Source: Macrostomum lignano
Lineage: Eukaryota
Reading direction: 5' to 3'
DNA length: 64,000 nt
Assembly: GCA_002269645.1 (NCBI GenBank)
Contig: NIVC01001497.1
Coordinates: 214,766 to 278,765, forward strand
This document shows, one piece after another, positions 15,588 to 63,771 of the stretch. The translations under genes and the position numbers were made by a program. The notes under the pieces were generated by a model. It was not told the origin of the DNA and ran no database searches. It worked only from the letters and a program-made list of their open reading frames with translations. Position 1 is the stretch's first letter. Every line of letters starts with the position of its first letter.

Positions 15588-17488
<1,901 letters not shown>

Positions 17489-19742: not shown

Positions 19743-19839
19743 CGGATGCGGCTGGAAGATGGGTGAAGTGAGGCTGCGATTAATAAGCGTCATCACGATT
19801 GTAAGAGACAATTTAAAGTGATTCCGGAGACAATCTGGG

Positions 19840-20362
19840 GCGATTCTAAGAGGCAACTCAAGTCGATTCTAAGAGGCAACTCAAGGCGATTCTAAGAGGC
19901 AGCTCAAGGCGATTCTAAGAGGCAGCTCAAGTAGATTCTAAGAGGCAACTCAAGGCGATTCTAAGAGGCAACTCAAGGCGATTCTAAGAGGCAACTCAAG
20001 GCGATTCTAAGAGGCAACTCAAGTAGATTCTAAGAGGCAACTCAAGTCGATTCTAAGAGGCAACTCAAGTCGATTCTAAGAGGCAACTCAAGTCGATTCT
20101 AAGAGGCAACTCAAGGCGATTCTAAGAGGCAACTCAAGGCGATTCTAAGAGGCAATTCAAGGCGATTCTAAGAGGCAACTCAAGTCGATTCTAAGAGGCA
20201 ACTCAAGTCGATTCTAAGAGGCAACTCAAGGCGATTCTAAGAGGCAATTCAAGGCGATTCTAAGCGGCAACTGAAGGCGGTTCTAAGAGGCAACTCAAGG
20301 CGGTTCTAAGAGGCAGTTTAAGGCGATTTTAAGAGGCAGTTTAAGGCGATTTTAAGAGGCAA
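19840..20362. repeat. 23-bp minisatellite GATTCTAAGAGGCAACTCAAGGC
   Basis: Direct reading; between MORN3 and ALG3. Confidence 0.95.
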
Positions 20363-27384: not shown

Positions 27385-28285
27385 GGATCATGAGATGCTG
27401 GGATCATGAGATGATATCATGTGATGCTGATAGCATGTGATGCGAAGATCATGTGATGCTGATAGCATGTGATGTTGATAGCATGTGATGCTGATAGCAT
27501 GTGATGCTGATAGCATGTGATGCTGATAGCATGTGATGCTGATAGCATGTGATGCTGATAGCATGTGATGCTGATAGCATGTGATGCTGATAGCATGTGA
27601 TGCTGATAGCATGTGATGCTGATAGCATGTGATGCTGATAGCATGTGATGTTGATAGCATGTGATTCTGATAGCATGTGATGCTGATAGCATGTGATGCT
27701 GATAGCATGTGATGCTAATAACATGTGATGCTAATAACATGTGATGCTAATAACATGTGATGCTGATAACATGTGATGCTGATAGCATGTGATGTTGATA
27801 GCATGTGATTCTGATAGCATGTGATGCTGATAGCATGTGATGCTGATAGCATGTGATGCTAATAACATGTGATGCTAATAACATGTGATGCTGATAGCAT
27901 GTGATGCAGATATGATTTGACGCAGATTATGTGATAGTGAAATCATGTGATGCTGAGATCATGTGAGGATGGGATCATGCAATGATGAGATCATATGATG
28001 CTGATAGCATGTGATGATGAGATCATGTGATGCTGACAGCATGTGACGCTGATAGTGAAATCATGTGATGCTGAGATCATGTGATGCTGACAGCATGTGA
28101 CGCTGATAGTGAAATCATGTGATGCTGAGATCATGTGATGCTGAGATCATGTGAGGATGAGATCATGTGAGGATGAGATCATGTGATGCAGATATGATTT
28201 GATGCAGATTATGCGATAGTGAGATCATGTGATGCCGAGATCATGTGATGCTGAGATCATGTGATGATGAAATAATGTGAATGAT
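27385..28285. repeat. 16-bp minisatellite CATGTGATGCTGATAG upstream of CDC40
   Basis: Direct reading; degenerates rightwards. Confidence 0.93.
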
Positions 28286-28796
28286 GTGATGCTTTGGTCA
28301 TGTGATTAAGTCAGGCTGTGATATTGTCAGTGACACTAACTAAACGGCTACTTTGAGTATTAGAATAAGTTTAGGTAATTTAATTATTATGCACTAGCTT
28401 TTGTATGCAAAGATTTGAAAGAAAAAAGTAAAGCCAAAGAATTCTGCTATTCGTAGCCAATAACAGTAGCGATATAAGTATTTATATGCAATTAATATCA
28501 GGTATGAACTGCGCGGAATGGTTTCATTAAAAAAGCAAAAAAACATATTTAAGCAAATTAATACAGGTGCAGAAAAACCTTTAACCGATCCCCAGCCACC
28601 AGGTGAAAGTGTGCGGCAAGGAATACGAAAGTTTAAAAATACAGGATTAATAACCCTTGCCTAGCTGACATAGTATAGTTAGCAAGTAATCAGAAAGCAG
28701 GTAAAAATGAAGGACTAGAGATATACCGCAGGCGCATGACATAATCAGGTACAGAATTGGCAGAGATGTTAATTTCAACTTTCACAGCAATGTTGG

Positions 28797-29070
28797 CCGT
28801 AGCCCAGTGGTTAAGCGCGGCGCTCTGATGCACCAGCGGCCCAGGCTCGATTCCAAGTGCAGTCACATTAATTTGGGGCTGAATTGGAATCTCGGCTTGG
28901 CTTTGCTTGTGCAATTAACGCTTTTGAGGACCAACCCCCCCCAAGGCACAGTGAAGTGTACATGCCTAACGATAAATAAAGTTACGTGTGCCTGTGAGTG
29001 TGTGCCTGTGCGTATGACTGCGTACGTATCCGCGCGCTTGTGTGCCTGCTCAGGGGAGTCGGTGGAATGG
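28797..29070 (+). mobile_element. tRNA-derived SINE family B candidate
   Basis: TAGCCCAGTGGTTAAG..GGCTCGATTCC head; body shared with 8700-8932; a short related piece at ~31005-31040. Confidence 0.55.
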
Positions 29071-29797
29071 GCAGCAATGCCTCTCGCCGGTTGTCCCATG
29101 CACTGGAATATTGCTAAACGAAAATTGAAAATTCCCAATAGCAGAATTTGTACAATTTAGTGGCACAATAAAAACAAACAATAAGGGTTAATTAATACAT
29201 AAATTACAATCATTCTCATAATACCGTAAAAACCACCTCAGAAGAAAGAAGAAACAAAGGCATACACAGTCTAAACGATTGAGTCCGTTTTTGTTAAACA
29301 GCACTGGCCCGACTTTGGCGATATGTAGCGAAAGTAATAAAAAACAAAGACAAAATTTTGGGGAGATTACACTGTTCAATTAGAAAAAAATCAATATAAA
29401 AACTACCTAGATTTTTAACGATAACTTTAAATTTAACCAAGGCGTCTGACTTATCATAATTGAGCTGGTAACGATCTCCAAGATTCCAAAAGCATTGCAT
29501 TGAAAAGCTGGACAGAATGGCAACAAAGAAAAAAAATTGATAAATAGAAAAACAGAGAACGGAGAGCGGCGGTGCAATTCTGGGGTACTTTTTGATACTA
29601 ATTTGATAAACAATTTTTATAACAAAGGTTGCCCAGCACCGCACAACAGGAGGAAAATAATTAAAAAATAAGATCTAGTCGCCAAATTATTGATCGATTG
29701 AAATAGACCGAACTGCAGATTTTGATGCGCTGAATAACCAACAGCCAAGAATTTCGGCGACGAAGTCAATTCTGCTTTTCAGTCTGCTTGAGAAACT

Positions 29798-31191
29798 TCA
29801 GTCTTGATTTGCCTGCGCTTCGGCCCGTAGCTGCTCAATCTTCTTCATTGGCAGAGACTGCGGCACTTTGAATATTTGCTGAAAGTTAAAGCAATGCATT
29901 ACATTCAATAATAATAATCATAATCATCATTATCATTGACTACACCTGCCCCAATCGGGCCAGATGTGCAACCGACAGCTCAGCCGCAGCTATTGCGCGG
30001 CGCATCTGAAGCTGGGTTTATTTTTTGTGCGTAGAGTGTGCATATGCACCTTAAATTTAAAAATTGCACCCTGAAATTGAAATGTAGGTGCAGTTTAAGT
30101 GCAGTCTCATAACATATATTTCTATTAAAGCCTCATCTGCACTGCTTTAAAATAAGAAAAAAATGCACTTTGAGCCTTAAAATTGCACTATGAAAGTGAG
30201 CATAGGGTGCGATTTTGCACCTTGTCTCTGGCAAAAAAGAAAACCCTGATCTGAAGGCTGCGTACGGCTGTTCAGTCCAAGGACTGGGGGGTCGCCACAC
30301 ACACCCTCAATTACCCCAGCTAATGCTGGCACCCATTTTACAGCTGGGTGAACTGAAGCAATGCAGAGTTAAGTGTCTTGTTCAAGGACACAGATTGTTT
30401 CAGTGGGATCAGGAATCGAACCCCTGACCTTCAAGTCGTGAGTCCGACACTCTAACCACTAGGCTACAACCTTGTATGTCACTGAAATCAGTTACTAGTG
30501 TGTCACTGAAATAAGTCACTAGTGTGTCACTGAAATCAGACGCCAGTGTGTCACTGAAATCAGTTACTCTTGTGTCACTGAAATCAATCACTAGTGGGTC
30601 ACTGAAATCAGCCTCTAGTGTGCCACTGAAATCAGTTGCCAGTGTCACAACCTACTATTTTAGAAAGTAAGTTACAAAATGAAGCAAGGCATCTCACCGG
30701 AATGAAGGTGTGACAGTGCAGCACATTCCGGTCCTGCACCATCTGTTGGAAAACTTTAATCGCGCTGGGCAGGTCTCGACAACCCAGCAGGGCGTTCTGA
30801 TTCAGATGGATCAGCGTCAGGGCTACGCGGAACAACACTTTGGAGCCTTCGAAGAACAGCACGTCCCAGATGCGGTAGACGGTCTGTGGGAATTTACGAG
30901 CGTACAGTCACTGTTGTTTATCAGTTCTCATTCCCAGCTCCATTTCATATCTACCGCGAAAGCTATCTGTTGGCCAGGGGGGGGGGCTTGTCTTGCAATT
31001 CACACAAGACGCCAACCCTCAAGGCACAGAGTGTACATGTACATGCTAGAATCAGGGCCGCGGTACAACCAAATGACTAACAAACAAACTAACTAACTGA
31101 CTAACTAACTAACTAACTGACTAACTAACTAACTGACTAACTAACTAACTGACTAACTAACTAACTGACTAACTAACTAACTGACTAACTG

Positions 31192-31250
<59 letters not shown>

Positions 31251-34200
31251 GACTAACTGACTAACTAACTAACTGACTAACTAACTAACTGACTAACTAA
31301 CTAACTGACTGACTAACTAACTAACTGACTAACTAACTGACTAACTAACTAACTAACTAACTAACTGACTAACTAACTGACTAACTAACTGACTAACTAA
31401 CTGACTAACTAACTAACTAACTATCTGACTAACTAACTAACTAACTAACTGACTAACTAACTGACTGACTGACAAACTAACTAACTGACTGACTAACTAA
31501 CTAACTAACTGACAAACTAACTAACTGACTAACTAACTGACTAACTGACTAACTAACTGACTAACTAACAGACTAACTAACTAACTAACTGACTAACTAA
31601 CTGACTAACTAACTAACTGACTAACTGACTGACTAACTAACTAACTGACTAACTAACTGACTGACAAACTAACTAACTGACAAACTAACTAACTGACTGA
31701 CTAACTAACAGACTAACTAACTGACTAACTAACTGACTAACTAACTAACTGACTAACTAACTGACTAACTGACAAACTAACTAACTGACTGACTAACTAA
31801 CAGACTAACTAACTGACTAACTAACTGACTAACTAACTAACTGACTAACTAACTGACTAACTGACTAACTGACTAACTAACTAACTGACTAACTGACTGA
31901 CTGACAAACTAACTAACTGACTAACTAACTGACTAACTGACTAACTGACTAACTAACTGACTAACTAACAGACTAACTAACAGACTAACTAACTAACTGA
32001 CTAACTAACTGACTAACTAACTAACTGACTAACTGACTGACTAACTAACTAACTGACTAACTAACTGACTGACAAACTAACTAACTGACAAACTAACTGA
32101 CTGACTAACTAACTAACTGACTAACTAACAGACTAACTAACTGACTAACTAACTGACTAACTAACTAACTGACTAACTAACTAACTGACTAACTAACTGA
32201 CTAACTAACTAACTGACTGACTAACTAACTGACTAACTAACTGACTAACTAACAGACTAACTAACAGACTAACTAACTGACTAACTAACTGACTAACTAA
32301 CTGACTAACTGACTAACTAACTGACTAACTAACTGACTAACTAACAGACTAACTAACTGACTAACTAACTAACTGACTAACTAACTGACTAACTAACTGA
32401 CTGACTAACTAAATAACTAACTGACTGACTAACTAACTGACAAACTAACTAACTGACTGACTAACTAACTAACTGACTAACTAACAGACTAACTAACTGA
32501 CTAACTAACTAACTGACTAACTAACTGACTAACTAACTGACTAACTGACTGACTAACTAACTAACTAACTAACTAACTGACTAACTGACTGACTGACTGA
32601 CTAACTAACTAACTGACTGACTAAATAACTAACTGACCAACGAACTAAACTATATAAATAACTAATTAACTACGAGCTACTACTGCTGTTGCAAAATCAA
32701 CCCGCATACCCCATTGCAAATCTGCCAGCGGATTCTGCAATCATTTTAGCTAAAACACGCACCTCAACAGGCAGCACATCCGCGTAGAGGCAGATGAACC
32801 ATTTAAGCGTCACCATGGGAAACGTGACGCCATAATCTTTCATAAATTTGTGCACCTGAGGCAGTTTCTCTTGAACCAATCGGCCAAGCACGTAGCACTC
32901 AGCCTGGAAGCTGGCCATGCTGGGCTGATAGTAACCGGGCAAAATTCGATTCACCAAAGTGTCCAACAGCCAGAAGGCTTTCTCTTCGTCTTTAACCACG
33001 AGTAGCATGAGCGCTGTTACGTAATTCAATCCCTGGCAATAACCAACTGCCGGATTCTTCTTGCCAAAGGCGTACAACACGTTAAATAGAGCTTGCATCT
33101 GCGACTCGCTGTTGCCAAATTCTTTAAAGTGCACATTCTCCGGGAATGTTCTGTGCAGATCGAGTCGCACCTGCGGCGCGCAATAAAACTAAACATTTAA
33201 TTAATCATTTCCTATATTGACACCTACTTATAGTAGTGTAAAATGTGTCGCGAGTTATTAAGAGTACATTGATGAAGCTGATACACAATAAAAGTGACGC
33301 TGTTAGTGAAAATAAAGGACGAGAAATATGAAATACTTACGAGCAAATATGAAATTTATACTAATTGCTACAGCTTGATATTCAACGCGACACATTGGCC
33401 TTCGAGAGATAGTCAGTAAGCAAATCTATTACAAAACAGCAGGAAATATGACTTATTAAGATAATTACACTTATAATTTATACACATATTACGGAGTCGC
33501 TAGTATGTCACTCAAATCTATAATGAGTCACTAGTGCGTCACTGAAATCTACTACATTGAGTCACTACTGTGTCACTGAAATCTACTATATTGAGTCACT
33601 AGTGCGTCACTGAAATCTACTACAGTGAGTCACTAGTGCGTCACTGAAATCTACTATATTGAGTCACTAGTGCGTCACTGAAATCTACTATATTGAGTCA
33701 CTAGTGCGTCACTGAAATCTACTATATTGAGTCACTAGTGCGTCACTGAAATCTACTACATTGAGTCACTAGTGCGTCACTGAAATCTACTATATTGAGT
33801 CACTAGTGCGTCACTGAAATCTACTATATTGAGTCACTAGTGCGTCACTGAAATCTACTATATTGAGTCACTAGTGCGTCACTGAAATCTACTACAGTGA
33901 GTCACTAGTGCGTCACTGAAATCTACTATATTGAGTCACTAGTGCGTCACTGAAATCTACTATATTGAGTCACTAGTGCGTCACTGAAATCTACTATATT
34001 GAGTCACTAGTGCGTCACTGAAATCTACTACAGTGAGTCACTAGTGATTCACTGAAATCTACTATATTGAGTCACTAGTGCGTCACTGAAATCTACTATA
34101 TTGAGTCACTAGTGCGTCACTGAAATCTACTATATTGAGTCACTAGTGCGTCACTGAAATCTACTACATTGAGTCACTAGTGATTCACTGAAATCTACTA

Positions 34201-34984
34201 TATTGAGTCACTAGTGCGTCACTGAAATCTACTATATTGAGTCACTAGTGATTCACTGAAATCTACTATATTGAGTCACTAGTGCGTCACTGAAATCTAC
34301 TACATTGAGTCACTAGTGATTCACTGAAATCTACTATATTGAGTCACTAGTGTGTCACTGAAATCTACTACATTGAGTCACTAGTGATTCACTGAAATCT
34401 ACTACAGTGAGTCACTAGTGATTCACTGAAATCTACTATATTGAGTCACTAGTGCGTCACTGAAATCTACTACAGTGAGTCACTAGTGATTCACTGAAAT
34501 CTACTATATTGAGTCACTAGTGTGTCACTGAAATCTACTACAGTGAGTCACTAGTGCTTCACTGAAATCTACTATATTGAGTCACTAGTGTGTCACTGAT
34601 GCATACAGATGTGTCACTAAAGCCTAACTGTACTTTAGCCAGTTGCTGCGGCGACATAAGCCGATGCCCTGCCAGACCCCAGCCGCTCACCTGATTGGCC
34701 ACAGCATCATCCTCGGCCACATTGCCCAGCAGGGTTTTATAGTAACCAGGCCGCTCATTAAGCCTGCCCTGCGCCCCGGAGACCAGCATCCAGACATCGG
34801 AGCGCAATTCTCTCGGTATGCCTTTGCGAATGAATCGTTTCAGCTTGCCGCTGCGACTCTGCAGCTCGGACTGGTTGAGGCTCTGCCAGCGGCCAGACCG
34901 CCTGTCCAGCACAGAGGCGTAGTCGCCAACAAATTCATTGAAAGCTCGTCGTTCATCGTCGGTCAGTTCGAAGCCGTAATCCAT
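29798..34984 (-). CDS. GRTP1: Growth hormone-regulated TBC protein 1 (Rab-GAP, TBC1D6 family); 4 exons, ~322 aa
   Basis: Exons 34691-34984, 32763-33170, 30698-30883, 29798-29878 (all phase 0). DYGFE, KRFIRKGIP, VWMLVSGAQ, RLDLHRTFP, VGYCQGLNY, LPVETVYRIWD.LF.EGSKVLFRVALTLI, CHTFI. The start codon is less certain than the rest. Confidence 0.92.
29905..30471 (-). mobile_element. tRNA-derived SINE family A, full-length copy interrupted by a MITE
   Basis: Head GGTTGTAGCCTAGTGG..GGTTCGATTCC (A and B boxes); body GTGTCCTTGAACAAGACACTTAAC..CAGCTGTAAAATGGGT; (ATT/ATG)n tail; two further copies in the window. Confidence 0.8.
30012..30248. mobile_element. hAT-type MITE (8-bp TSD) inserted in a SINE
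   Basis: ATCTGAAG duplicated at 30004-30011 and 30249-30256; imperfect TIRs CTGGGTTTATTTTTTG / CAAAAAAGAAAACCCTG; the SINE copy at 9062-9248 lacks the insert. Confidence 0.75.
30475..30648. repeat. 24-bp minisatellite TGTCACTGAAATCAGTCACTAGTG (GRTP1 intron 3)
   Basis: Direct reading. Confidence 0.85.
31077..32670. repeat. (AACT/GACT)n tetranucleotide microsatellite (GRTP1 intron 2)
   Basis: Direct reading. Confidence 0.97.
33505..34600. repeat. 34-bp minisatellite GTCACTGAAATCTACTATATTGAGTCACTAGTGC (GRTP1 intron 1)
   Basis: Direct reading; ~32 units. Confidence 0.96.
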
Positions 34985-35254
34985 GTGCTCTGAGGTTGTT
35001 TTTAATGCTAATCTATCAACTTTAATCTCGTGACCTATAAAATGCTTGATAGCTCGCCAATTGAAGTGTTTCATAACCTTGAAACTTCATAAAATTAATT
35101 AACATTTATTGGATTAGCCATCCACATTTGGGATAATATAAATACATACATACACAAATCTGTTTATAGTATTGTACATTTCCCCTCATTTTCTCAACAA
35201 TGGTAATCAATTAGCACCTTGAAGCTTCAAAATTATTTTATTCAAGGCTAGTAA

Positions 35255-35543
35255 TACAAGGGACATCCCAAAATCTCTTTGTAATTGGTTTTTAACTCTC
35301 AAGAATGTAAAGATATTGCATTGAAACCCTACACAAACCTGACTGCAAATTATTTCAGTGTATTTATAAAAATTTCAGATTAAAACATTGATCATTTTGA
35401 GTAAAATTGCATAATTTGTGTAGCTAAGTCATGTAACTGCACATTGCCTTTTTGGTGTTCACAATCTGCACCAAGTGGTACCATGGTAAATGAATATTTC
35501 CTAGCATTCACCATTCACTGAGACTTTTGGGATAACCCTTGTA
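35255..35543. mobile_element. Short non-autonomous mariner-type element (MITE)
   Basis: TIRs TACAAGGGACATCCCAAAA and TTTTGGGATAACCCTTGTA; TA at both ends; no CpG inside. Confidence 0.7.
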
Positions 35544-36599
35544 ATGTCTAAAGTCAATCAAAAAGCTAATATTCTTACTTTCTAGGTCTAACTGAATGGC
35601 TAAGACTATATAATTAAAAATTTATATAATTTTTAGATAAAAAGAAGTAGTTCAGAATGAAATATAAAATAGATAAAAAAATAAATCAAAGTTTATCAAT
35701 AGCTATTCAAAGTTTACACCTTAAAATATAATAAATATTATGTATCCATATAGGAATTAGAATAACTAATAACTAGTAACTAGTGGCACTATAAATTAAA
35801 TAAATTAAAGCCAGTTTTGCCTATGGTAATTTTTTTAATTTAATAAGCTAATTATTAACATTATATTGAGCCTCAACAAAAGCTTAAGAGATTTTGCCAT
35901 TAAGTAGAAAATGGAACTAAGGTCTATGCTCTTCTGTGTTCTGTCATAACAATACTAGATATCTATATATAAATACTATCCAACCTATTTAATTTAATTA
36001 GTATAAATTGTGACAGACCAAAGATGCATAATAAATTTGATAGCCTTTTAAACAAAAAATTGATTATGAATCAAAGATTTTTTATTTTCTTTTTCTGGGT
36101 AAATTACAAAATAAAGTTGTAGCCTAGGTAATGTAATTTCAAAGACAATATGTTATGAATATTTGATGCAAAGCCATATATTGCAATCGATTTTTTGTAT
36201 ATAATAATATACTAATATAATGTATATAATAATATAATAATAAACTTAAAACCATTATCCTATGTTTATCTTACCTACAATATTTATGGAATATCAAAAT
36301 TCTTTTTATATAGATATAAAATACCCCATTATGTTTTTATGCAATATTTTAGTAGATTATTATGCTTTTATAACAAAAGTCAAAAATAGCCAAATGAAGC
36401 CAAAGGCCAATAAGTATATATTATATACACTGGTTTTATTAATAGTTATTTCATAAATCTACTGACAAACATCTCTAGTTTCTCTTCTATTTTTTCATTG
36501 AGTTGATATTTTAGTCAGGCTTTAAAGCTCATAATAGTTATATCTATTATCTATGGAAAATCTTCTTTCTAGCTTTAATAAAGATAAAAAATCTTGTAT

Positions 36600-38160
36600 C
36601 TTTCATACAACCCTCTTAAGCCACCATAGAGAAAAGTGACTTTTTGAAGTGTAATAGGCCTATCATTGTGGAAATAACCATTAAGAAGTGGGCTAATATC
36701 TTATTCTGGGCTAATAGATTACTCTTTGTTTAGATGCTTTATAAATATATCCCTTAGTTAAAAACATAGTATATTGAATGCTCTAAATGATGATAGTTGC
36801 ATGATCCTTTGGCAACTTTTAAAACTCTTTGGAGATATCTATGAAGAGCATTTATATTGCATCATTGCTGATCATCTCAATATGACATAAGTTGTTGCTT
36901 GATGGATCATGGGTTTCCAAACTTTTAATATTGGTCTAGTTGCAAGAGAGAATTTATATCTGCAACTAATTTCTAAATGCTTATTGAAATAAGCCCATTT
37001 TTATTTGTCAACTAGCTAGTGACTAGTGATAAATCATGGTTTTATTACTATAAACAAGGACCAAGCAACAAAGTAACATATGAAAGGCATATAATAAAGA
37101 TCTACCTATCAAGGCTAAGACTATAATTTGCTAAGAAGCATATGACAATAGTCTTTTGGGACAAAAAAGGCATCTTGCTAATTAAATGGCTACTAAAAAG
37201 AAAAATTACCAATTTTGGCCTAATATTACTATGAAATCAGAGAATGGCTACATGAAAAGATCAAGAATTAGAGTTATTGCTATATAATGATTACCAAGGG
37301 CATAGTGCTACAATATATAGTAATAACAATTCTAAGCTACATATTGATACTTGCAATGAAGCTCTAGACAATATCAAGAGACTAGGCTTTGAGCTTCTGT
37401 CTTACCTTGCCTATTTTCCTGATTTGCCCCTTAGTGAATATTAGTTATTACTTTACTTAAAATGAAAAAGATACATTGTAGTCATCATTATAGAAGCCTT
37501 TTAAATCTTGGCTTTGCTAGGGGCCTACCAACCAGTGGTTGCAAAGTAGGCTAGCTATCCTATAGAATTGTTTGTTAAACTTACTATATGCACTTTTTAA
37601 GCTATTTATATGAAACTTTCTAAAAATGAATATTTTTATTATGCCAACATTTTAGAAGTGTTTTGGTATTAAAATATTTGTTAGTTCAAGGGCTAGACAA
37701 ACCTCTTGGTAGCACAATCTAGGTCATTTGCTAGCCATTTTCAAGTGGAAAGCACTTTATATAAAATATTTGCATTGCAGCTTAGCAGCAAAATTTCAAA
37801 CCCAAAACCCCTCTCTTTTTATGCCAGACACATTTTTGCCAGTGACATTAGCATACTCATTAATAGTTAGTTGTTAAAATTGAGAAAAACCTAGAAATTG
37901 CAATAAAGTTAGGTTGCAACCCTCCATGATGGAATTTAAATGCCAAAATACTTCTTAAATGTTGGCATAATAAAAATATTCATTTTTGGAAAGTTCCATG
38001 TCAATAGCTAAAAAATGTGTACATAATGAATTTAATAAACAATTCTGCAGGATAGCCCATAGGCCTATCTTCAAATAATTCTTTGCTCAAGGCATCAGCA
38101 AGCTACCAGAAATATGGCACAAATGTGTTCAGCCCTGGGGAAACTATGTTGTGAAGTGTG
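36600..38160 (+). pseudogene. Heavily C->T/G->A-mutated mariner transposase relic interrupted by a MITE
   Basis: Fragments: IIADHLNMT*VVA*WI (~36861), LVTSDKSWFYYY (~37015; cf. IVTGDESW), KHMTIVFWDKKGILL (~37135), LGFELLSYLAYFPDLPLSEY* (~37382; cf. LGFELLPHPAYSPDLAPSDY), GISKLPEIWHKCV (~38091). Confidence 0.82.
37554..38056. mobile_element. MITE-like element with ~120 bp inverted arms nested in the mariner relic
   Basis: 37554-37675 is the reverse complement of 37934-38056 (about 17 differences); it separates the YSPDL region from the C-terminal KLPE.W motif. Confidence 0.75.
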
Positions 38161-38551
38161 ACTATGAGTATAACATTGATTATTAAGAATTATTGTTTTT
38201 ACTTGTTTAGAAAAATGGGGAGGTGTTGCTCGCTTAGCTAGGGCCTAATGCTTATGTGCTAAGCTATATAATTTGAGGGGCCAATTTGCTGGCCCCTATT
38301 GCCATTTTTCTATGTGGCCACTCTATATTATATAGCAATTGTCATTGAAAGCATTTGGCATTGTTGTATCTGCACCCGACCCAATTGCTTGTACCACTAG
38401 GCCCTACCTGAAATAGATTTACTAGAACTGCCTTGCCAGGCATATTATAATTATAACAATCCTATACACTGAAACTAGTGGACTATGCACTATACTAACA
38501 ATAAACAGACTCCTGATATAGTACAGGTGATAGACTAAGCCTAGCCTAGAT

Positions 38552-38623
38552 AGTTACTGTAGGCGTAGAGTCGTAGACCCGCATAGTCCATATACTAATC
38601 CATATACTAAAAATGGTCTGTCG

Positions 38624-38681
<58 letters not shown>

Positions 38682-39285
38682 TTGATTTTAGCAAAAATGG
38701 CTCAACCGATTTTCTTCGAACTTGCACTGTTCGATCAGAAATTTTCCCGTGACAGTACATGCATCGTGGCTAAGAAATTGCATGATGCTAAAGGGATTAA
38801 ATATTCGAAAAACATGCTTTTTTGCAAAGGTCAAGCATCGAAATGCATTGTAAGAATGCTAGCAGAAAAACTGACTGGTTGAATTCTGATTCTAAAATAG
38901 ATTGCATCACAATACACAAGACACTCCATTGAATTGCGTCACAGCGTTGAGTGTGAAAGCATAGCATAGTACTCAATTTATATTGCGTTACCATATTGTT
39001 AACTTTTATAGAGACTGGTACTGACTTGCCTAAGAAATTGATTATGTCATAACTCGTAACTGCTTCGTGACTTTTTACTCTACCTGACTTTGTGTGAGTG
39101 TTGAATTATATAAGTGGTACAAATTCACTGATTACTTCGATGAGAGCTAGCCTAGAGCTGAACAGACCAGACTGCTAATGCAGCAACCTGGGTTCGAATC
39201 TAAGTAGTTTAAAAGTAGTAGTGTAAAATTTTTTATTAAAAGCTTTTTTTTATTAAAAGCTAAATTAAAAACACTTAGATTACTG
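38552..39285 (+). mobile_element. Possible HINE/DINE-1-like (non-autonomous Helentron) element
   Basis: GTTACTGTAGGCGTAGAGT..TATACTA, then (GT)n, then GCTCAACCGATTTTCTTCGAACTT, resembling the HINE layout as recalled; its 3' ~430 bp recurs at 40469-40830. Confidence 0.45.
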
Positions 39286-40454
39286 CACTCCATAAGCCAA
39301 GGATTATTGCTATTAATAAACCAAGGATTACTGCACTTGATTAATCAAGGATTATTGCTATTAATAAACCAAGGATTACTGCACTTGATTAATCAAGGAT
39401 TATTGCTATTAATAAACCAAGGATTACTGCACTCGATAAACCAAGGACTATTGCTCTTGGCAAACCAAGGATTACTGTACTCAATAAGCCAAGGATTATT
39501 GCTATTAATAAACCAAGGATTACTGCACTTGATAAGCCAAGGATTATTGCTATTAATAAACCAAGGATTACTGCACTCAATAAGCCAAGGATTATTGCTA
39601 TTAATAAACCAAGGATTACTGCACTCAATAAGCCAAGGATTATTGCTATTAATATACCAAGGATTACTGCACTCGATAAACCAAGGACTATTGCTCTTGG
39701 CAAACCAAGGATTACTGCACTCAAGAAGCCAAGGATTATTGCTATTAATAAACCAAGGATTAATGCACTTGATTAATCAAGGATTATTGCTATTAATAAA
39801 CCAAGGATTACTGCACTCGATAAGCCAAGGATTATTGCTATTAATAAACCAAGGATTACTGCACTCGATAAGCCAAGGATTATTGCTATTAATAAACCAA
39901 GGATTACTGCACTTGGCAAACCAAGGATTACTGCACTTGATAAGCCAAGGATTATTGCTATTAATAAACCAAGGATTACTGCACTCAATAAACCAAGGAC
40001 TATTGCTCTTGGCAAACCAACGATTACTGCACTCAATAAGCCAAGGATTATTGCTATTAATAAACCAAGGATTACTGCACTCGATAAGCCAAGGATTATT
40101 GCTATTAATAAACCAAGGATTACTGCACTTGGCAAACCAAGGATTACTGCACTCGATAAGCCAAGGATTATTGCTATTAATAAACCAAGGATTATTGCAC
40201 TCGATAAGCCAAGGATTATTGCTATTAATAAACCAAGGATTACTGCACTCGATAAGCCAAGGATTATTGCTATTAATAAACCAAGGATTACTGCACTTGG
40301 CAAACCAAGGATTACTGCACTCGATAAGCCAAGGATTATTGCTATTAATAAACCAAGGATTACTGCACTCGATAAGCCAAGGATTATTGCTATTAATAAA
40401 CCAAGGATTACTGCACTTGGCAAACCAAGGATTACTGCACTTGATAAGCCAAGG
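39280..40454. repeat. 24-bp minisatellite with alternating A/B units (48-bp higher order)
   Basis: CCAAGGATTATTGCTATTAATAAA alternating with CCAAGGATTACTGCACTCGATAAG. Confidence 0.95.
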
Positions 40455-40468
40455 AAATTTTTGACTTG

Positions 40469-40830
40469 AAATGCATTGTAAGAATGCTAGAGAAAAACCT
40501 GACTGACTGAATTTCAATTCTGATAAAGATTGCATCACAACAAGTAGAAAACAGTGCCGAAGAAATGCACACACGACTTGATTTAAATTGTGTAACCAAT
40601 ATTGCTAACTTGAATTGAAACTGATACTGGCTGACTGAGAAATTGATTATGTCATAACTTTTTACTCTAATTGACTTGCTGTAAGAATTGAATTATAAGG
40701 GCCACAATTCATGTTCTCCAATTGAAAAGAGATAGCCTAGATGTGAACAGACTGAACTGCTAATGTAGCAACCTGGGTTCGAATCTTAGTAGTGCAAAAT
40801 AATTTTTTATTAAAAAAGCCTTAAAAACAC
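40469..40830 (+). repeat. Diverged direct copy of 38841-39285, ending in a tRNA-Ser-like remnant
   Basis: Shared GAAATGCATTGTAAGAATGCTAG, GAAATTGATTATGTCATAACT and TAGCCTAG..ACTGCTAATG.AGCAACCTGGGTTCGAATCT. Confidence 0.75.
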
Positions 40831-40834
40831 AGAA

Positions 40835-42470
40835 TGCTAAACATTAAAGAGCCACCATGCCAAACATAAAAGAGCCATGATGTTGAACATTAAAGAGCCA
40901 CCATGCCAAACATAAAAGAAGCACCCTGTCAAACATATACGTGACTCCATGTCAAAGATTAAAAAGCCACCATGTCAAATATTTAAGAGCCACCATGTCA
41001 AACATTTAAGAGCCACCATGTCAAACATATATGTGACTTTATGTCAAACATTAAAGAGCCACCATGTCAAACCTAAACAAGCCACCATGTCTAACATTTA
41101 AGAGCCACCATGTCAAACATTTAAGAGCCACCATGTCAAACATTAAAGAGCCACCATGTCAAACCTAAACAAGCCACCACGTCTAACATTTAAGAGCCAC
41201 CATGTCAAACATTTAAGAGCCACCATGTCAAACATTAAAGAGCCACCATGTCAAACATTTAAGAGCCACCATGTCAAACATTTAAGAGCCACCATGTCAA
41301 ACATAAAAAGGTATACCATGAAGAACATTGAAGAGCCACCATGTCAAACTTTAAAGAGTCACCATGTCGAACATTAAAAAGCCACCATTTTGAACATTAA
41401 AGAGCCACCATGTCGAACATTAAAAAGCCACCATGTCAAACATTGAAGAGCCACCACGTCAAACATTAAATAGCCACTTTGTAGAACATTAAAGAGCCAC
41501 CGTGTCAAACATAAAAGAGCCACCAGGTTAAACATTAAAGAGCCACCATGTCAAATAATAAAGAGCCACCATGTCAAACATAGAAGAGCCACCATGCAAA
41601 ACATAGAAGAGCCACCATGTCAAAACATAAAAGTGCTATCATGTCAAACCTAAAAGAGCCACCATGTCAAACATAAAAGAGCCACCATGTCAAAGATTTA
41701 AGAGCCACCATGTCAAACATATATGTGACTTTATGTCAAACATTAAAGAGCCCCCATCTCAAACATTAAAGAGCCACATTTTTAATTTCGAACATTAAAA
41801 AGCCACCATTTCGAACATTAAAGAGCCACCATGTCATAAATTTAAGAGCCACCATGTCAAACATTAAATAGCCACTTTGTCGAACATTAAAGAGCCACCG
41901 TGTGAAACATAAAAGAGCCACCATGTCAGACATTAAAAAGCCACCATATCAAACATAAAAGAGTTACCAATTAGAACAAAAAACAGCCACCATGTCGAAC
42001 ATAAAAGAGCCACCATGAAGAACATTAAACAGCCACCATGTCAAAGATTTAAGAGCCACCATGTCAAACATATATGTGACTTTATGTCAAACATTAAAGA
42101 GCCACCATTTCGAACATTAAAGAGCCACCATGTCAAACATTAAATAGCCACCATGTCAAACATAAAAGAGCTATACCATGAAGAACATTAAAGAGCCACT
42201 TTGTCGAACATTAAAGAGCCACCATGTCAAACATTAAAGAGCCACCATGTCAAACCTAAAAGAGCCACCATGTCTAACATAAAAGAGCCACCATGTTAAA
42301 CATTAAAGAGCCACAATGTCAAGCAATAAAGAGCCACCATATCAAGAAGAGCCACCATGTCAAACATAGAAGAGCCACCATGTCAAACATAGAAGAGCCA
42401 CCATGTCAAACATAGAAGAGCCACAATGTCAGACATTAAAGAGCTACCATATCAAACATAAAAGATACAC
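40835..42470. repeat. 23-bp minisatellite AAACATTAAAGAGCCACCATGTC
   Basis: Direct reading; heterogeneous units. Confidence 0.93.
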
Positions 42471-42556
42471 AATTTCAAACGTAAAAGTAAGCGAATTTTA
42501 AAGGAGCCACTATAATGCTAAGGAAATTGTCGCACTAGCTACTTATTGTCTGGTGG

Positions 42557-43830: not shown

Positions 43831-45202
43831 GTCTTTGGATGATTTCTTTTTGCATTGCACTATATTTGAGTATTTTGTCTGTTTTTGTGAAGGCTTTATT
43901 TGGCGATCTTTTTGTTACTTGTAGAGAGCAGAGATTCTATACAGATGCCCCCCAACGGGGGGCGAAGATTGCTAGTTTTAACTAAAATTAAAAACTGACT
44001 TGTTTAAATTGCATAGGATTCTAAGTTCGAAGCTCTATATAGGGTTTAGTATAATTTATAGTAAATTTTATAATGATTTAACATAGTGCTAAACTGCTAA
44101 TGCTTTACATGCATTTATTTCAAAGTAGTTACTTTAAAGTTAAATTCTTAATGAATCTTGTAAAATTTTAAAATTAGATTGTCGCAATTATTTCATTCGG
44201 TCGCCAAAAACACACGAGGTAGAACAATTAATATCCATGAATAGAAAGTTTTCAAAGCTTTGTTGGTCATATAAATGATTAAGTCTTTTTATTTGACCAA
44301 ATATAGTTTAACTTTACATCATCGCGCTTCTCTTTGTTATAACGGGTCACTTGTAAATAAAAAAATTTCCATTTTGAAACCTATATTCTTTTGCTGTTCG
44401 AGCCTAATTCCACGGGTGCATTTGTCCTGCGGTTTACTATGACTATGAGAGAGATCCGATCTAAATAAAATTAAAGTGTGGACATAAGCTAACGCTTGTT
44501 TACTTTTTATAGTTTTAATTTTTTTTTAATATTATTGAAATTTGGACTTTTTGTGCATAGTTATCGTACACATGTACTCATATACAACTATTTTTAGTTT
44601 TCAGTAACAGCAAATAGATTCAGCTAATTCATAATTGCAACTTTTCAGTTTTCGGTAACAGCAAATAGATTCAGCTAATTCATAATTAAAACTCATTCCA
44701 GTTTAGTTGCCTATTCTACTAACTTAAAATTCCGAAATTTTGAATAGTCTGAAAAGGCCCACTTTTCAATGATGTGCTTTATATGCTGTAAAATGGGAAA
44801 TTAATACTATTGGGCTGAAAGCAATAAAAAAATAGACATTTATAGTATCATGCATAAAATCTGCAATTTATTTGAAAGTCACAGCTCTCTCTATTTCACT
44901 AATATTCATCAACCTATATTGTAATCCAAGCTGATAAATTAAATTTCAGTTTATTTCAATCTGATAAAGCATGTAGCATCAATTTCAATAGGGTTAATAG
45001 TTGTTTTATTTTCCTTTCATTTTATTGTCTCAAACATTTTCTTTTTACTATTAGCTAAGTAAAGATAATTTTTTACTGGTAGATAGTGTAATAAGAACAA
45101 ACAGGATACATTTTTACCAGATAAAAACTTAGGTTAGAGCTTGAATTTCTAACTCGTGATTTTCAGCAATTAGAGTTAATAACTTTCTGTTTCAGATCAG
45201 CC

Positions 45203-46957
45203 ATGGGCATTGGCGTCATGGTGTGGAGCTTGCTAACTAAATTTCTTTTCTGTGAAATCCTCGGCTTAGTAGCGCTATTTATGCTGCCATTTATTGAGTC
45301 CCAGCGTTGTAAAAGTCTGCTCGAATCGAGATTTTTTTCTGCATTGGACCAACGACGAGATGTCACGTTCATTTGCCTCTTTGTGCCACTGTCTGCCCTC
45401 ACCGTTCATTCCACTTGGCAGCTTGTCAGATACCCACTGCCCGCTGCCGATGCGGCCAAACTGACGGATCTGCTTGCTTTGCAAAGTGACACATTCATAG
45501 TTGGTTCTGTCACGCTGCTCTGGCTTGTAATTTGGTGTACTGCTCGCCTTATCTCTAGGTATTGTTATGATCGGAATTCCAGCAGTTAAATTTAAACCAT
45601 TACTTACAAGACTCCATTATGGGCAAGCACGGTATAGACTACTTAGTTTATAGTAGCATAAAGAGTAGCATAAATTTGTTTAGTTATCTTGCCAATGCAT
45701 GCTCGATATCCTACTGTAGCTGAAACATCGGCGACCCAGATAACAAAACAGAGAAGAGCACTAAGACCCATCTTAAGTCCAAGAATACCCATCTCAAGTC
45801 CAAGAATACCCATCTCAAGTCCAAGAATACATACCTGAAGTTCGAGAATCCCAATCTCAAGTCCAAGAGTGCCCCCTCAAGTCCAAGAATACCCACCTGA
45901 AGTTCGAGAATCCCAATCTCAAGTCCAAGAATACCCACCTCAACTCCAAGAATACCCACCTCAACTCCAAGAATACCCACCTCAGGTCCAAGAATGCCCA
46001 CCTCAAATCCAAGAATACATACCTGAAGTTCGAGAATCCCAATCTCAAGTCCAAGAGTGCCCCCTCAAGTCCAAGAATACCCACCTGAAGTTCGAGAATC
46101 CCAATCTCAAGTCCAAGAATGCACCCCTCAAGTCCAAGAATACCCACCTGAAGTTCGAGAATCCCAATCTCAAGTCCAAGAATGCACCCCTCAAGTCCAA
46201 GAATACCCACCTGAAGTTCGAGAATCCCAGTCTCAAGTCCAAGAGTTCGAGAATCCCAGTCTCAAGTCCAAGAATGCCCACCTCAGGTCCAAGAATTCCC
46301 ACCTCAAATCCAATAATACATACCTAAAGTTCGAGAATCCCAATCTCAAGTCCAAGAATACCCACCTCAAGTCCGAGAATCTCAATCTCAAGTCCAAGAA
46401 TACCCACCTGAAGTCCGAGAATCTCAATCTCAAGTCCAAGAATACCCACCTCAAGTCCGAGAATCCCAGTCTCAAGTCCAAGAGTACTCATCTCAGCTCT
46501 AAGAATCCCTCATCTGACCAAAAGTCAATCCCCATCGCACAGGCTCGGCACCTTAGAATCCGAGCTGACTACAGCGCGTCAAAGGCTGGCTGATGGTGCC
46601 GCAGCTGTGGCCATCGCCACTGCGGCCGCCGCGGCTGCCAGTCCCACTGGAAATTCATCGTCTAGCGGAGCTCCCCGACGTGCAGCAGCGGACGCAGCGG
46701 GCGAGTCGAGCCGTCGCCACAGCATGGCGGTGGTGGTGGAGGCCGCGGTGGAGGCGGAGCGGACTCGGCGAGAGCTGGCGGACACTCGTGTCGCCCTGGA
46801 ACGGGCCCTGGAGCGGCTGCATCGCGCCGAGCTCGACTTGTCGGCGATGCGTCGTCAGGCTGAAAGCACGAGCCGGGCGTTCGACGAACTGCTGGAGGAG
46901 CACAACCGGCTGCAGATGGCGGTGGCCGGCGGCCAGCAAAGAAAGAAAGACACCTGA
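45203..46957 (+). CDS. BAP31/BAP29-like ER membrane protein (3 TM segments, coiled coil, KKXX tail); 2 exons, ~256 aa
   Basis: Exons 45203-45558 and 46543-46957 (phase 2). N-terminal LPFI..QR.KSLL.SR with three hydrophobic segments; C-terminal AMRRQAES....FDELLEEHNRLQ.AV.G..RKKDT resembles the BAP31 tail. Confidence 0.8.
45765..46510. repeat. 21-bp minisatellite with 63-bp higher order (BAP31-like intron)
   Basis: CTCAAGTCCAAGAATACCCAC / CTGAAGTTCGAGAATCCCAAT. Confidence 0.93.
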
Positions 46958-52600: not shown

Positions 52601-53310
52601 TTCCTTTAGAAAGCTCCTCCTTCCTTTAGAAAGCTCTCCTTCCTTTAGAAAGCTCCTCCTTCCTTTAGAAAGCTCCTCCTTCCTTCAGAAAGCTTCTCCT
52701 TCCTTTAGAAAGCTCTCCTTCCTTCAGAAAGCTCCTCCTTCCTTCAAAAAGCATCTCCTTCTTTTAAAAAGCTCCTTCTTCCTTCAGTAAGCTCCTCCTT
52801 CATAAAGCTCCTCGTTTCCCTTCAGAAAGCTCCTCCTTCCTTTAGAAAGCTCCTTCCTTTAGAAAGCTCCTTCCTTTAGAAAGCTCCTTCCTTTAGAAAG
52901 CTCCTCCTTACTTCAGAAAGCTCCTCCTTCCTTTAGAAAGCTCTCCTTCCTTCAGAAAGCTCCTCCTTCCTTCAGAAAGCATCTCCTTCTTTTAAAAAGC
53001 TCCTCCTTCCTTCAGTAAGCTCCTCCTTCATAAAGCTCCTCGTTTCCCTTCAGAAAGCTCCTCCTTCCTTTAGAAAGCTCCTTCCTTTAGAAAGCTCCTC
53101 CTTCCTTTAGAAAGCTCCTCCTTCCTTCAGGAAGCTCCTCCTTCCTTTAGAACGCTCCTCTTTCCTTCAGAAAGCTCCTCCTTCCTTCAGAAAGCTCCTC
53201 CTTCCTTCAGAAAGCATATCCTTCTTTTAGAAAGCATCTCCTTCTTTTAGAAAGCTCCTCCTTCCTTCAGAAAGCATCTCCTTCACTGCAGAAAACTCCT
53301 CGTTTCCATT
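49605..53310. repeat. 3.7 kb pyrimidine-rich ~20-bp satellite AGAAAGCTCCTCCTTCCTTY with kb-scale internal duplications
   Basis: Direct reading; marker variants (CAGTAAGC, CATAAA, CGTTTCCC) recur in the same order. Confidence 0.97.

Positions 53311-53519: not shown

Positions 53520-63771
<10,252 letters not shown>

What the first reader, a model, noticed from the sequence alone, without database searches (positions are those of the whole stretch)
35057..38563. 3.5 kb transposon block with near-total CpG loss and a RIP-like C->T signature in an animal genome
Seen: a manual scan finds only about 3 CpGs (near 36188, 38231, 38377) in ~3.5 kb, where roughly 80 would be expected if GC is near 30%. 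The exons and repeats on both sides are CpG-rich, and the borders are sharp. The block holds a mariner relic and two MITEs. Changes from conserved mariner motifs are mostly C->T or G->A, many outside CpG context: TGDE->TSDK (act Agt gat Aaa), PHPAYSPD->SYLAYFPD (cac->tac, cct->tct/ctt, tct->ttt), R->stop (cga->tga). Established: CpA->TpA hypermutation of repeats is the hallmark of fungal repeat-induced point mutation (RID/DIM-2); in animals only CpG decay after methylation is the norm. Inference: this lineage may have a targeted repeat-mutating system (dense CpG plus CpA methylation followed by deamination, or a cytidine deaminase) acting on defined TE domains.
Basis: partly seen in the sequence, partly recalled or inferred. 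Interest (0 to 1): 0.88.

Follow-up and report, generated by a model that had tools for sequence, protein, structure and literature searches.

The report
CpG-stripped dead transposon island in flatworm
A 3.5 kb stretch of dead transposons in a Macrostomum-like flatworm has lost almost every CpG and much of its G+C, but the mutation pattern fits ordinary methylation-driven CpG decay plus AT-biased ageing, not a fungal-style repeat-mutating system.

Summary
Window 35057-38563 has 3 CpGs where 77.5 are expected (o/e 0.04, GC 29.7%). AT-rich unique DNA elsewhere in the window has CpG o/e 0.76-1.1.

The window comes from a relative of Macrostomum lignano, a lineage reported to keep DNMT1 and DNMT3.

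I found an intact relative of the dead mariner (P0121/L001, 52% GC, 62 CpGs). It aligns at the DNA level (67.6% identity), and four outgroups polarise the changes. On the relic lineage the changes are C>T 61%, C>A 21% and T>C 4%.

- All 43 aligned CpGs are destroyed.
- Non-CpG C>T rates do not depend on the 3' base: CpA 0.31, CpT 0.32, CpC 0.25 (p=0.35).
- Transversions make up 35-39% of changes.
- C>T and G>A events are interleaved at random along the strand.
- The composite RIP index is negative.

A simulation shows that 7-15x faster transitions at CpG, the usual 5-methylcytosine effect, reproduce the near-zero CpG count.

One anomaly remains. GC->AT bias on the relic lineage is about 11-13:1, against about 2:1 among tandem-array variants in the same window.

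Verdict: an old, probably germline-methylated transposon graveyard. It is a new example of a known kind and of modest interest.

The parts
35057..38563 (.). CpG-free, AT-rich block in the intergenic DNA between a RabGAP-TBC gene (minus strand) and a Bap31-like gene (plus strand, 45203-45589)
   Evidence: 3 CpGs against 77.5 expected, GC 29.7%, GpC o/e 1.74. Neighbouring genes from Pfam.
35057..36436 (.). Left part: unclassified AT-rich DNA (GC 25.5%, 1 CpG)
   Evidence: No Pfam hit in any of six frames. CpG o/e 0.04.
35256..35542 (.). Candidate Stowaway-like MITE with TIR CAAGGGACATCCCAAAA / TTTTGGGATAACCCTTG and TA on both sides
   Evidence: Inverted pair I5. Flanking TA read from the sequence. 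Copy number could not be tested.
36437..37500 (+). Dead mariner, 5' part: 5' TIR, UTR and most of the transposase frame, with many stops and frameshifts
   Evidence: Aligns to L001 positions 14-1117 at 67.6% identity. P0121 E=3e-30. Pfam Transposase_1.
37501..38061 (.). Nested foldback or MITE insertion that interrupts the mariner frame. It has 0 CpG. Arms are 37554-37675 and 37934-38056.
   Evidence: 122 aligned positions with 17 mismatches, 13 of them transitions. The break in the L001 alignment is seen.
38062..38255 (+). Dead mariner, 3' part: the transposase C-terminus FFAQGISKLPEIWHKCVQ..., the stop codon and a degraded 3' end
   Evidence: L001 1167-1248 aligns to window 38077-38158 at 84%. 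The 3' TIR aligns poorly.
38256..38563 (.). Right part: unclassified DNA with 1 CpG (o/e 0.08)
34559..34985 (-). First coding exon of the RabGAP-TBC gene. It is CpG-rich, and its putative start codon lies about 70 bp from the block's left edge.
   Evidence: ORF. The downstream exon 32697-33170 hits RabGAP-TBC at E=1e-38. The start-codon choice (MDYGFEL) is an inference.
39278..40455 (.). 24/48-bp minisatellite 0.7 kb to the right of the block. Its one CpG column is mostly decayed.
   Evidence: The column reads TA 19, TG 13, CG 10, CA 6 across 49 units. CpG C>T is 0.29 per site against 0.046 at non-CpG sites.
60200..61190 (+). Comparison element: a young mariner of another subfamily, nearly intact, in an intron of a class C GPCR gene and not CpG-depleted
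   Evidence: One in-frame stop, 69 CpGs in 1243 bp. Pfam Transposase_1 at 1e-29. 7tm_3 exons on either side.

Best explanation
The block is an old intergenic transposon graveyard in the genome of a macrostomid flatworm. It holds a dead mariner of the P0121/L001 family, a foldback MITE nested inside that mariner, probably a second small MITE, and unrecognisable AT-rich DNA. Two ordinary processes acting in place over a long time explain its composition.

(1) CpG sites mutated by C>T/G>A transitions about 7-15 times faster than other cytosines. This is the classical footprint of germline 5-methylcytosine deamination. The lineage is reported to keep DNMT1 and DNMT3.

(2) All other cytosines and guanines decayed towards A/T on both strands, without dinucleotide preference (C>T 61%, C>A 21% of polarised changes). 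This took a roughly 50% GC element down to about 31% GC.

Because new CpGs can arise only through the rare AT->GC changes, the two processes together drive CpG to almost zero.

What is shown: the substitution spectrum, the loss of all ancestral CpGs, and the sufficiency of about 10x CpG hypermutability. What is inferred: that methylation is the cause, and that the domain is or was methylated in the germline. The sharp edges are explained by a selected coding exon on the left and younger repeat modules on the right, which is also an inference.
For: Organism. The ALG3 ORF is 81% identical to the M. lignano protein. M. lignano keeps DNMT1 and DNMT3 and has low-level 5mC (PMC11292947 and PMC9246332; PMC10658182).

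Ancestral state. The five intact relatives have CDS GC of 44-56% and CpG o/e of 0.60-0.75. The relic is sister to L001: 68.7% nucleotide identity against <=54% to the others, and transversion distance 0.111 against >=0.226.

Spectrum. L001->relic differences are C>T 180, C>A 63, T>A 35, T>C 19, C>G 14, T>G 13. Polarised with 4 outgroups, 117 relic-lineage changes are C>T 71, C>A 24, T>A 8, C>G 5, T>C 5, T>G 4.

CpG. All 43 aligned L001 CpGs are destroyed. C>T is 0.51 per CpG cytosine against 0.30 at non-CpG cytosines (odds ratio 2.5, p=1.6e-4). The block has a TpG+CpA excess of +53.5 against about 74 missing CpGs.

Simulation with the measured non-CpG rates. With k=1, 32 CpGs remain in the 1339-bp proxy. 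With k=5, 5.5 remain and P(<=1) is 0.035. With k=10-15, 1.1-1.6 remain (o/e 0.03-0.04), as observed.

In-place action. The adjacent minisatellite shows its CpG column decaying, whereas arrays elsewhere keep 79-94% CG at most CpG columns (53% and 62% in two arrays). C after G is the least mutated cytosine in the relic (0.20 against 0.31-0.41). GpC excess is also a feature of the host's unique DNA (1.3-1.6).
Against: The GC->AT to AT->GC per-site ratio on the relic lineage is about 11-13, with a rough 95% range of 7-29 (95/287 against 9/295). Among tandem-array variants in the same window it is about 2.25, or 1.4 in a cruder count. Plain host-wide neutral decay therefore does not fully account for the non-CpG cytosine loss, unless arrays are a poor control because of gene conversion or amplification of variants.

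Exons in the window have CpG o/e near 1. Any methylation here is therefore not the gene-body type usual in invertebrates.

No methylation data exist for this genome. DNMT presence is taken from the literature on a related species.

The 600 bp directly right of the block (38681-39277) keeps CpG o/e 0.78, so the putative methylated domain is not uniform.

The ancestor is approximated by a single sister element at 68% identity.
Confidence: 0.66

Rival explanations
1. A domain-restricted cytosine hypermutation regime that goes beyond CpG. The TE island would be subject to methylation or deamination of cytosines in all contexts, or to locally poor repair of deaminated and oxidised bases. Cytosines in general would then decay several times faster there than in the rest of the genome, with CpG fastest of all.
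For: The relic-lineage GC->AT bias is 11-13:1 against about 2:1 in tandem-array variants. The equilibrium GC implied by the relic's rates is about 7%, while the host's unique non-coding DNA sits at 30-40%. There is a mild 5' neighbour effect, CpC 0.41 > ApC = TpC 0.31 > GpC 0.20, p=0.002. The borders are sharp.
Against: There is no 3' context preference (p=0.35) and no strand clustering. C>A transversions rise as well, which a cytidine deaminase or a methyltransferase does not explain. The control is noisy, with per-array ratios from 0.1 to 21.6. Only one relic was measured. The neighbouring minisatellites show CpG-specific decay without an elevated non-CpG bias (ratio 1.95).
Confidence: 0.15
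2. A RIP-like or AID/APOBEC-like repeat-targeted editing system. An enzyme would recognise repeats and deaminate cytosines in a preferred dinucleotide context.
For: C>T/G>A is the largest class of change. TpA/ApT rose from 0.59 in L001 to 0.97 in the relic. The block is an AT-rich TE island with sharp edges, like fungal RIP isochores. There is a mild CpC preference.
Against: CpA is not preferred over CpT (0.31 against 0.32). The substrate index is 1.47-1.61 and the composite RIP index is negative. Transversions are 35-39% of changes. C>T and G>A events are randomly interleaved, with no long same-strand runs beyond chance. The nearly intact second mariner in the same window is untouched, with 69 CpGs and one stop.
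Confidence: 0.06
3. Foreign or chimeric origin. The 3.5 kb would have decayed in a different, AT-rich and heavily CpG-methylated genome. It would then have reached this position by horizontal transfer, or through an assembly error or contaminant join.
For: The composition changes abruptly at both ends. The block has no similarity to the rest of the window. Its dinucleotide distance to host segments is 0.15-0.27, against a host-host mean of 0.13 and maximum of 0.22. Its substitution regime differs from that of the host arrays.
Against: The block shares the host's unusual GpC excess. The left edge runs straight into the 5' end of a host gene, and host repeat modules follow on the right. The adjacent host minisatellite shows CpG decay in place. 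No TIRs or target duplication bound the block. Nested insertions are what a resident graveyard looks like. Read-level support cannot be checked here.
Confidence: 0.08
4. The elements were natively CpG-poor and AT-rich, so no CpG-specific process is needed.
For: Some transposons and MITEs are AT-rich from the start. The left 1.4 kb and the MITEs have no reference copy to compare against.
Against: All five intact relatives of the mariner carry 37-59 CpGs per roughly 1.06-1.2 kb CDS at 44-56% GC. Polarised changes place the loss on the relic lineage. With no CpG hypermutability, 32 CpGs would remain in the 1339-bp proxy, and k<5 is rejected.
Confidence: 0.03

Closest known systems
CpG decay of germline-methylated transposon relics (5-methylcytosine deamination), as in vertebrate genomes and in invertebrates that methylate TEs
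   Same: CpG o/e falls to near zero. There is a matching TpG/CpA excess, and ancestral CpGs are replaced by TG/CA. CpG hypermutability of about 10x is sufficient, and both strands are affected equally.
   Different: The surrounding genome, including exons and other non-coding DNA, is not CpG-depleted, so the effect is confined to an island. Depletion (0.04) is deeper than the roughly 0.2 typical of mammals (my knowledge), because AT->GC back-mutation is very rare here. Methylation itself was not measured.
Fungal repeat-induced point mutation (RIP; RID, DIM-2) and the AT-rich isochores it produces
   Same: An AT-rich, sharply bounded island made of dead transposons. C>T/G>A is the commonest change, and premature stops arise from CGA.
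   Different: There is no CpA (or any other) 3' dinucleotide preference, and the substrate index is not depleted. Transversions are 35-39% of changes. Mutations are not strand-coordinated. A nearly intact mariner nearby is unaffected.
AID/APOBEC cytidine-deaminase editing of retroelements and DNA
   Same: An excess of C>T, and a slightly higher rate at cytosines preceded by C.
   Different: The context preference is at most twofold. There are no clusters and no strand bias (C>T 95 against G>A 85; C>A 29 against G>T 34). C>A changes rise as well.
Mariner (Tc1/mariner superfamily) elements of the P0121/L001 lineage
   Same: The relic aligns at DNA level across the 5' TIR, the UTR and the transposase frame. 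It shares exclusive derived bases with L001 (49 columns against 8-16 for the other relatives).
   Different: The relic is dead, with many stops and frameshifts, a nested insertion and a degraded 3' end. It has 31% GC against 52% in L001.

Membership tests
RIP (repeat-induced point mutation) | Changes are almost exclusively C>T/G>A transitions | tested here: not met
   Ts/Tv is 1.59. Transversions are 125 of 324 differences and 41 of 117 polarised changes.
RIP (repeat-induced point mutation) | Strong dinucleotide preference (CpA>TpA in Neurospora-type RIP) | tested here: not met
   C>T fractions are CpA 0.31, CpT 0.32 and CpC 0.25, p=0.35. Polarised values are 0.27, 0.22 and 0.18, p=0.41.
RIP (repeat-induced point mutation) | RIP indices: TpA/ApT >=0.89, (CpA+TpG)/(ApC+GpT) <=1.03, composite index >0 | tested here: not met
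   For the block the three values are 1.00, 1.47 and -0.48. For the relic they are 0.97, 1.61 and -0.64. Only the first index passes. Host AT-rich DNA also reaches 0.85-0.97 on that index.
RIP (repeat-induced point mutation) | Acts on duplicated sequence, with a RID/Masc1-type methyltransferase present | not testable with these tools
   The window holds no second copy. The proteome of this species is not available.
5mC-driven CpG decay of a methylated domain | CpG o/e far below that of flanking and comparable DNA | tested here: met
   0.04 against 0.76-1.10 in AT-rich unique host segments.
5mC-driven CpG decay of a methylated domain | Ancestral CpGs converted to TpG/CpA faster than other cytosines mutate | tested here: met
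   43 of 43 aligned CpGs are lost. C>T is 0.51 against 0.30, p=1.6e-4. TpG+CpA excess is +53.5. The simulation requires k>=7.
5mC-driven CpG decay of a methylated domain | DNMT1/DNMT3 present in the organism | not tested
   Reported for M. lignano (PMC11292947, PMC9246332). This window's species is a relative (81% ALG3 identity), and its own genes were not examined.
5mC-driven CpG decay of a methylated domain | 5mC actually present on this DNA in the germline | not testable with these tools
   This needs bisulfite or nanopore data.
AID/APOBEC editing | Strong 5' context motif (TC, CC or WRC) and strand-coordinated clusters | tested here: not met
   The 5' effect spans only about twofold (CC 0.41, GC 0.20). 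The runs test gives z=0.19.
Tc1/mariner transposon (the relic) | Homology to a DD(E/D) mariner transposase | tested here: met
   P0121 E=3e-30 over 98% of the query. Pfam Transposase_1 E=5e-5 at 23.5 bits, just under the 24-bit cut-off.
Tc1/mariner transposon (the relic) | Terminal inverted repeats and a TA target duplication | tested here: inconclusive
   The 5' TIR aligns to L001's TIR. The 3' TIR is too degraded to place, so the TA duplication cannot be read.
MITE (the nested element 37501-38061) | Short, non-coding, long inverted arms, multi-copy family | tested here: inconclusive
   The arms span 122 nt at 86%, and there is no ORF or Pfam signal. Copy number is unknown, with 0 hits in the window and in the metagenome scan. 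The exact ends and target duplication are not resolved.

The most novel reading that the evidence does not exclude
In this flatworm lineage, methylated TE islands undergo a domain-restricted decay of cytosines in every context, with CpG fastest. This would make them several-fold more AT-biased than the rest of the genome. It would be an animal counterpart, in outcome, of fungal AT-isochore formation, but reached by a gradual process that is neither context-specific nor strand-specific (all-context methylation, or locally deficient repair of deaminated and oxidised bases).
Probability: 0.15. Interest if true: 0.65.

Novelty: new member of a known kind. Interest (0 to 1): 0.3.

Why it matters
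Genome-wide methylation patterns have been described as unknown for any free-living flatworm (PMC9246332). This block is an evolutionary footprint suggesting that in a macrostomid, CpG methylation has acted on an intergenic transposon island, while the neighbouring exons kept normal CpG. That differs from the gene-body pattern usual in invertebrates, and it gives a concrete place to look with bisulfite or nanopore data. It also removes a more exciting but wrong reading, an animal RIP system. The unexplained excess of GC->AT change outside CpG is a modest lead on regional mutation bias.

Tried and rejected
- **Left half of the block:** a six-frame Pfam scan of 35001-37000 found no domain (one search failed on stop codons).
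- **Other copies in the window:** neither the block nor the L001 family has another copy there.
- **Metagenome pattern scans:** both scans, for the MITE core and for the mariner 5' UTR, returned nothing. No family consensus from the same genome could be built.
- **Source assembly:** an exact-protein look-up of a window ORF, meant to identify the assembly, found nothing.
- **Wasik et al. 2015** (the M. lignano methylation data) is not held in the library.
- **Second mariner as a control:** none of the 240 fetched proteins is a close relative of it (best 37% identity), so it could not serve as a second polarised control.
- **Tandem-array control:** the first version, using fixed-register slicing, gave Ts/Tv below 1 and was probably polluted by register shifts and higher-order repeats. 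A wrap-around alignment replaced it.
- **MITE arms:** the mismatches could not be polarised, and none has the YR/YR pattern that would mark an old CpG.
- **tRNA-like motif:** ARAGORN and Rfam found nothing in the window, including the GGTTCGAATC motif near 39190 and 40780.
Full report
**1. The observation**

Window 35057-38563 is 3507 bp at 29.7% GC. It contains exactly three CpGs, at 36188, 38231 and 38377, against 77.5 expected from base composition. That gives o/e 0.039 and P about 1e-24 to 1e-29. The whole window has GC 43% and CpG o/e 0.69.

Other long CpG-free stretches in the window are simple tandem arrays whose repeat unit lacks CG. Non-tandem AT-rich segments with GC 0.30-0.40 have CpG o/e 0.76-1.10. 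The block is therefore a real local anomaly in complex sequence.

Every sub-part of the block is CpG-free. The left edge abuts a CpG-rich coding exon (28 CpGs in 457 bp). The right edge is followed by sequence with o/e 0.78, then by minisatellites with o/e 0.26-0.29.

**2. Organism and setting**

A single-exon ALG3 ORF (18396-19856, minus strand) is 81% identical to the Macrostomum lignano protein and at most 57% identical to other animals. The window therefore comes from a macrostomid flatworm related to M. lignano.

The window is gene-dense, and nearly every intron or spacer holds its own minisatellite. The block lies in a roughly 10 kb spacer between two genes:
- a RabGAP-TBC gene on the minus strand, with exons at 32697-33170 and 34559 to about 34985;
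- a Bap31-like gene on the plus strand at 45203-45589.

Reviews state that M. lignano keeps DNMT1 and DNMT3 and has low-level 5mC, and that methylation patterns in free-living flatworms are unknown. The primary paper is not held in the library.

**3. Anatomy of the block**

- **35057-36436:** unclassified DNA at 25.5% GC, with no protein signal in any frame. It includes a plausible 287-bp Stowaway-like MITE at 35256-35542 (pair I5; TA on both sides, read).
- **36437-37500 plus 38062 to about 38255:** a dead mariner on the plus strand.
- **37501-38061:** a foldback or MITE nested in the mariner, with 122-nt arms carrying 17 mismatches, 13 of them transitions.
- **38256-38563:** unclassified.

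No inverted repeats or target duplication bound the block as a whole. It is not one discrete insertion.

**4. An ancestral reference**

A search with the relic's conceptual translation found one intact transposase, P0121 (355 aa, E=3e-30). It is encoded on 1.3-1.4 kb contigs L001-L003.

The DNA of L001 aligns to the relic across the 5' TIR, the UTR and the reading frame, at 67.6% identity over about 1050 positions. L001 has 51.6% GC and 62 CpGs.

Four further relatives, L004-L007, have CDS GC of 44-56% and CpG o/e of 0.60-0.75.

The relic is clearly sister to L001, which makes polarisation with the four outgroups valid:
- nucleotide identity 0.687 against <=0.54 to the others;
- transversion distance 0.111 against >=0.226;
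- 49 exclusive shared bases against 8-16.

**5. The substitution spectrum**

L001->relic differences are C>T 180, C>A 63, T>A 35, T>C 19, C>G 14 and T>G 13, with Ts/Tv 1.59.

Polarised to the relic lineage, 117 changes are C>T 71, C>A 24, T>A 8, C>G 5, T>C 5 and T>G 4. The L001 lineage has only 25 changes, mostly T>C.

C>T by 3' neighbour is CpA 0.31, CpC 0.25, CpT 0.32 and CpG 0.51. The three non-CpG classes do not differ (p=0.35; polarised p=0.41), while CpG is higher (p=1.6e-4).

All 43 aligned CpGs of L001 are gone.

The 5' neighbour has a modest effect. At non-CpG sites the C>T fraction is CC 0.41, AC 0.31, TC 0.31 and GC 0.20, p=0.002.

The plus strand shows 95 C>T and 85 G>A events, interleaved at random (92 runs, 90.7 expected). 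C>A (29) and G>T (34) are likewise balanced.

RIP indices for the relic are TpA/ApT 0.97, (CpA+TpG)/(ApC+GpT) 1.61 and composite -0.64. L001 itself gives 0.59, 1.52 and -0.94.

The cytosines involved sit in CpA, CpC and CpT contexts alike.

**6. Is ordinary CpG hypermutability enough?**

I evolved the L001 element in silico with the measured non-CpG rates and a multiplier k for transitions at CpG.

| k | CpGs left in the 1339-bp proxy | Note |
|---|---|---|
| 1 | 32 | |
| 5 | 5.5 | P(<=1) = 0.035 |
| 10 | 1.6 | o/e 0.04 |
| 15 | 1.1 | o/e 0.03 |

The relic has 1 CpG in 1258 bp. A multiplier of about 7-15 therefore suffices. This is the order usually ascribed to 5mC deamination in mammals (my knowledge). 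The depth of the depletion comes from the rarity of AT->GC changes, which create new CpGs.

The block's TpG+CpA excess (+53.5) is of the same order as the roughly 74 missing CpGs.

**7. Did it happen here?**

The 24/48-bp minisatellite 0.7 kb to the right has one CpG column. Across 49 units it reads TA 19, TG 13, CG 10 and CA 6. That is C>T 0.29 per CpG site against 0.046 at non-CpG sites. CpG columns in most arrays elsewhere keep 79-94% CG, though two arrays keep only 53% and 62%. Pooled, they show C>T of 0.047 against 0.032. This suggests CpG hypermutability at this locus in host-generated sequence. The evidence is limited, because it rests on one column and another non-CpG column is also polymorphic.

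The relic's preferential retention of GpC matches the GpC excess of the host's unique DNA (1.3-1.6). These points favour decay in place over import of an already decayed fragment. Read-level continuity cannot be checked here.

**8. The residual anomaly**

On the relic lineage, GC->AT changes affect 95 of 287 sites and AT->GC changes 9 of 295. This is a per-site ratio of about 11, or about 13 after correction for multiple hits, with a rough range of 7-29.

Variants in 19 tandem arrays outside the locus give 0.0475 against 0.0211, a ratio of 2.25. The two arrays next to the block give 1.95.

The control is imperfect. Ratios per array range from 0.1 to 21.6, variants can be amplified, and gene conversion may favour GC. 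Taken at face value, though, cytosines outside CpG decayed about five times more one-sidedly in the block than array variants suggest.

The absence of any 3' context preference, the absence of strand clustering, and the accompanying rise in C>A argue against a specific deaminase or CpH methyltransferase. They fit general spontaneous damage (deamination, oxidation) in DNA that is poorly repaired, or that is not subject to GC-biased conversion. I keep this as the novel case, at about 15%.

**9. Comparison with known systems**

The block behaves like a germline-methylated transposon relic undergoing CpG decay. It meets the sequence-level criteria for that (section 6). Direct methylation and DNMT presence in this species remain untested.

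It fails every testable criterion of RIP except the uninformative TpA/ApT index. It also fails the motif and cluster criteria of AID/APOBEC editing.

A nearly intact mariner of another subfamily sits 22 kb away, with one in-frame stop and 69 CpGs in 1243 bp. Transposons are therefore not mutated on arrival.

**10. Verdict**

The RIP-like interpretation is not supported, and the part of it that invokes dense CpG methylation followed by deamination is the best explanation.

This is a new example of a known kind. It has some value as a pointer to TE- or intergenic-targeted methylation in a macrostomid flatworm, and it leaves a modest open question about regional GC->AT bias.

Noticed in passing
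window 1-64000 (e.g. 15588-17488, 49607-53301, 31076-32672): Almost every intron and spacer carries its own minisatellite or microsatellite. There are about 39 arrays with units of 2-48 bp (one of 166 bp), including (ATAG)481 and a 20-mer repeated 189 times. Together they fill roughly 40% of the window.
   Followed up: partly
window 60200-61190 (+), flanked by 58237-58677 and about 61300-61480: A nearly intact mariner of a different subfamily (one in-frame TGA, 50% GC, 69 CpGs) sits in an intron of a class C GPCR (7tm_3) gene. It is a useful contrast to the decayed relic.
   Followed up: partly
window 38840-39214 and 40468-40799: Two copies (71% identical) of a roughly 350-bp unit, each followed by a different minisatellite (39278-40455 and 40839-42487). 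Both carry a GGTTCGAATC motif like a tRNA B-box, but ARAGORN and Rfam find no tRNA. This may be a SINE-like or composite repeat family. Four of the first copy's 8 CpGs are TG in the second.
   Followed up: partly
whole window, unique segments (e.g. 10686-13826, 28271-30476, 43835-45765): GpC is over-represented (o/e 1.3-1.6) in unique DNA throughout the window. In the mariner relic, cytosines preceded by G are the least mutated (0.20 against 0.31-0.41). This looks like a host-wide neighbour effect on cytosine mutation.
   Followed up: partly
window 39278-40455: The single CpG column of the 24-bp unit is present as TA, TG, CG and CA in both sub-units of the 48-bp higher-order repeat. This suggests recurrent CpG decay within a young array.
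   Followed up: yes
loci L001-L003 (JGI 3300022723, 3300022725; Logan SRR23862445): An apparently active full-length mariner, with an intact 355-aa transposase, perfect-looking TIRs and TA flanks. It encodes an identical protein in three independent samples of unknown host, and it is the closest living relative of the relic.
   Followed up: partly
window 18396-19856 (-): ALG3 appears to be encoded by a single uninterrupted exon of about 420-486 codons. This is unusual next to the intron-rich neighbouring genes.
   Followed up: no
window 49607-53301 and 694-1762: Two arrays show a very one-sided GC->AT variant spectrum (ratios 21.6 and 6.0), unlike the other arrays (median about 1.8). Mutation bias, or variant amplification, is heterogeneous between arrays.
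   Followed up: no
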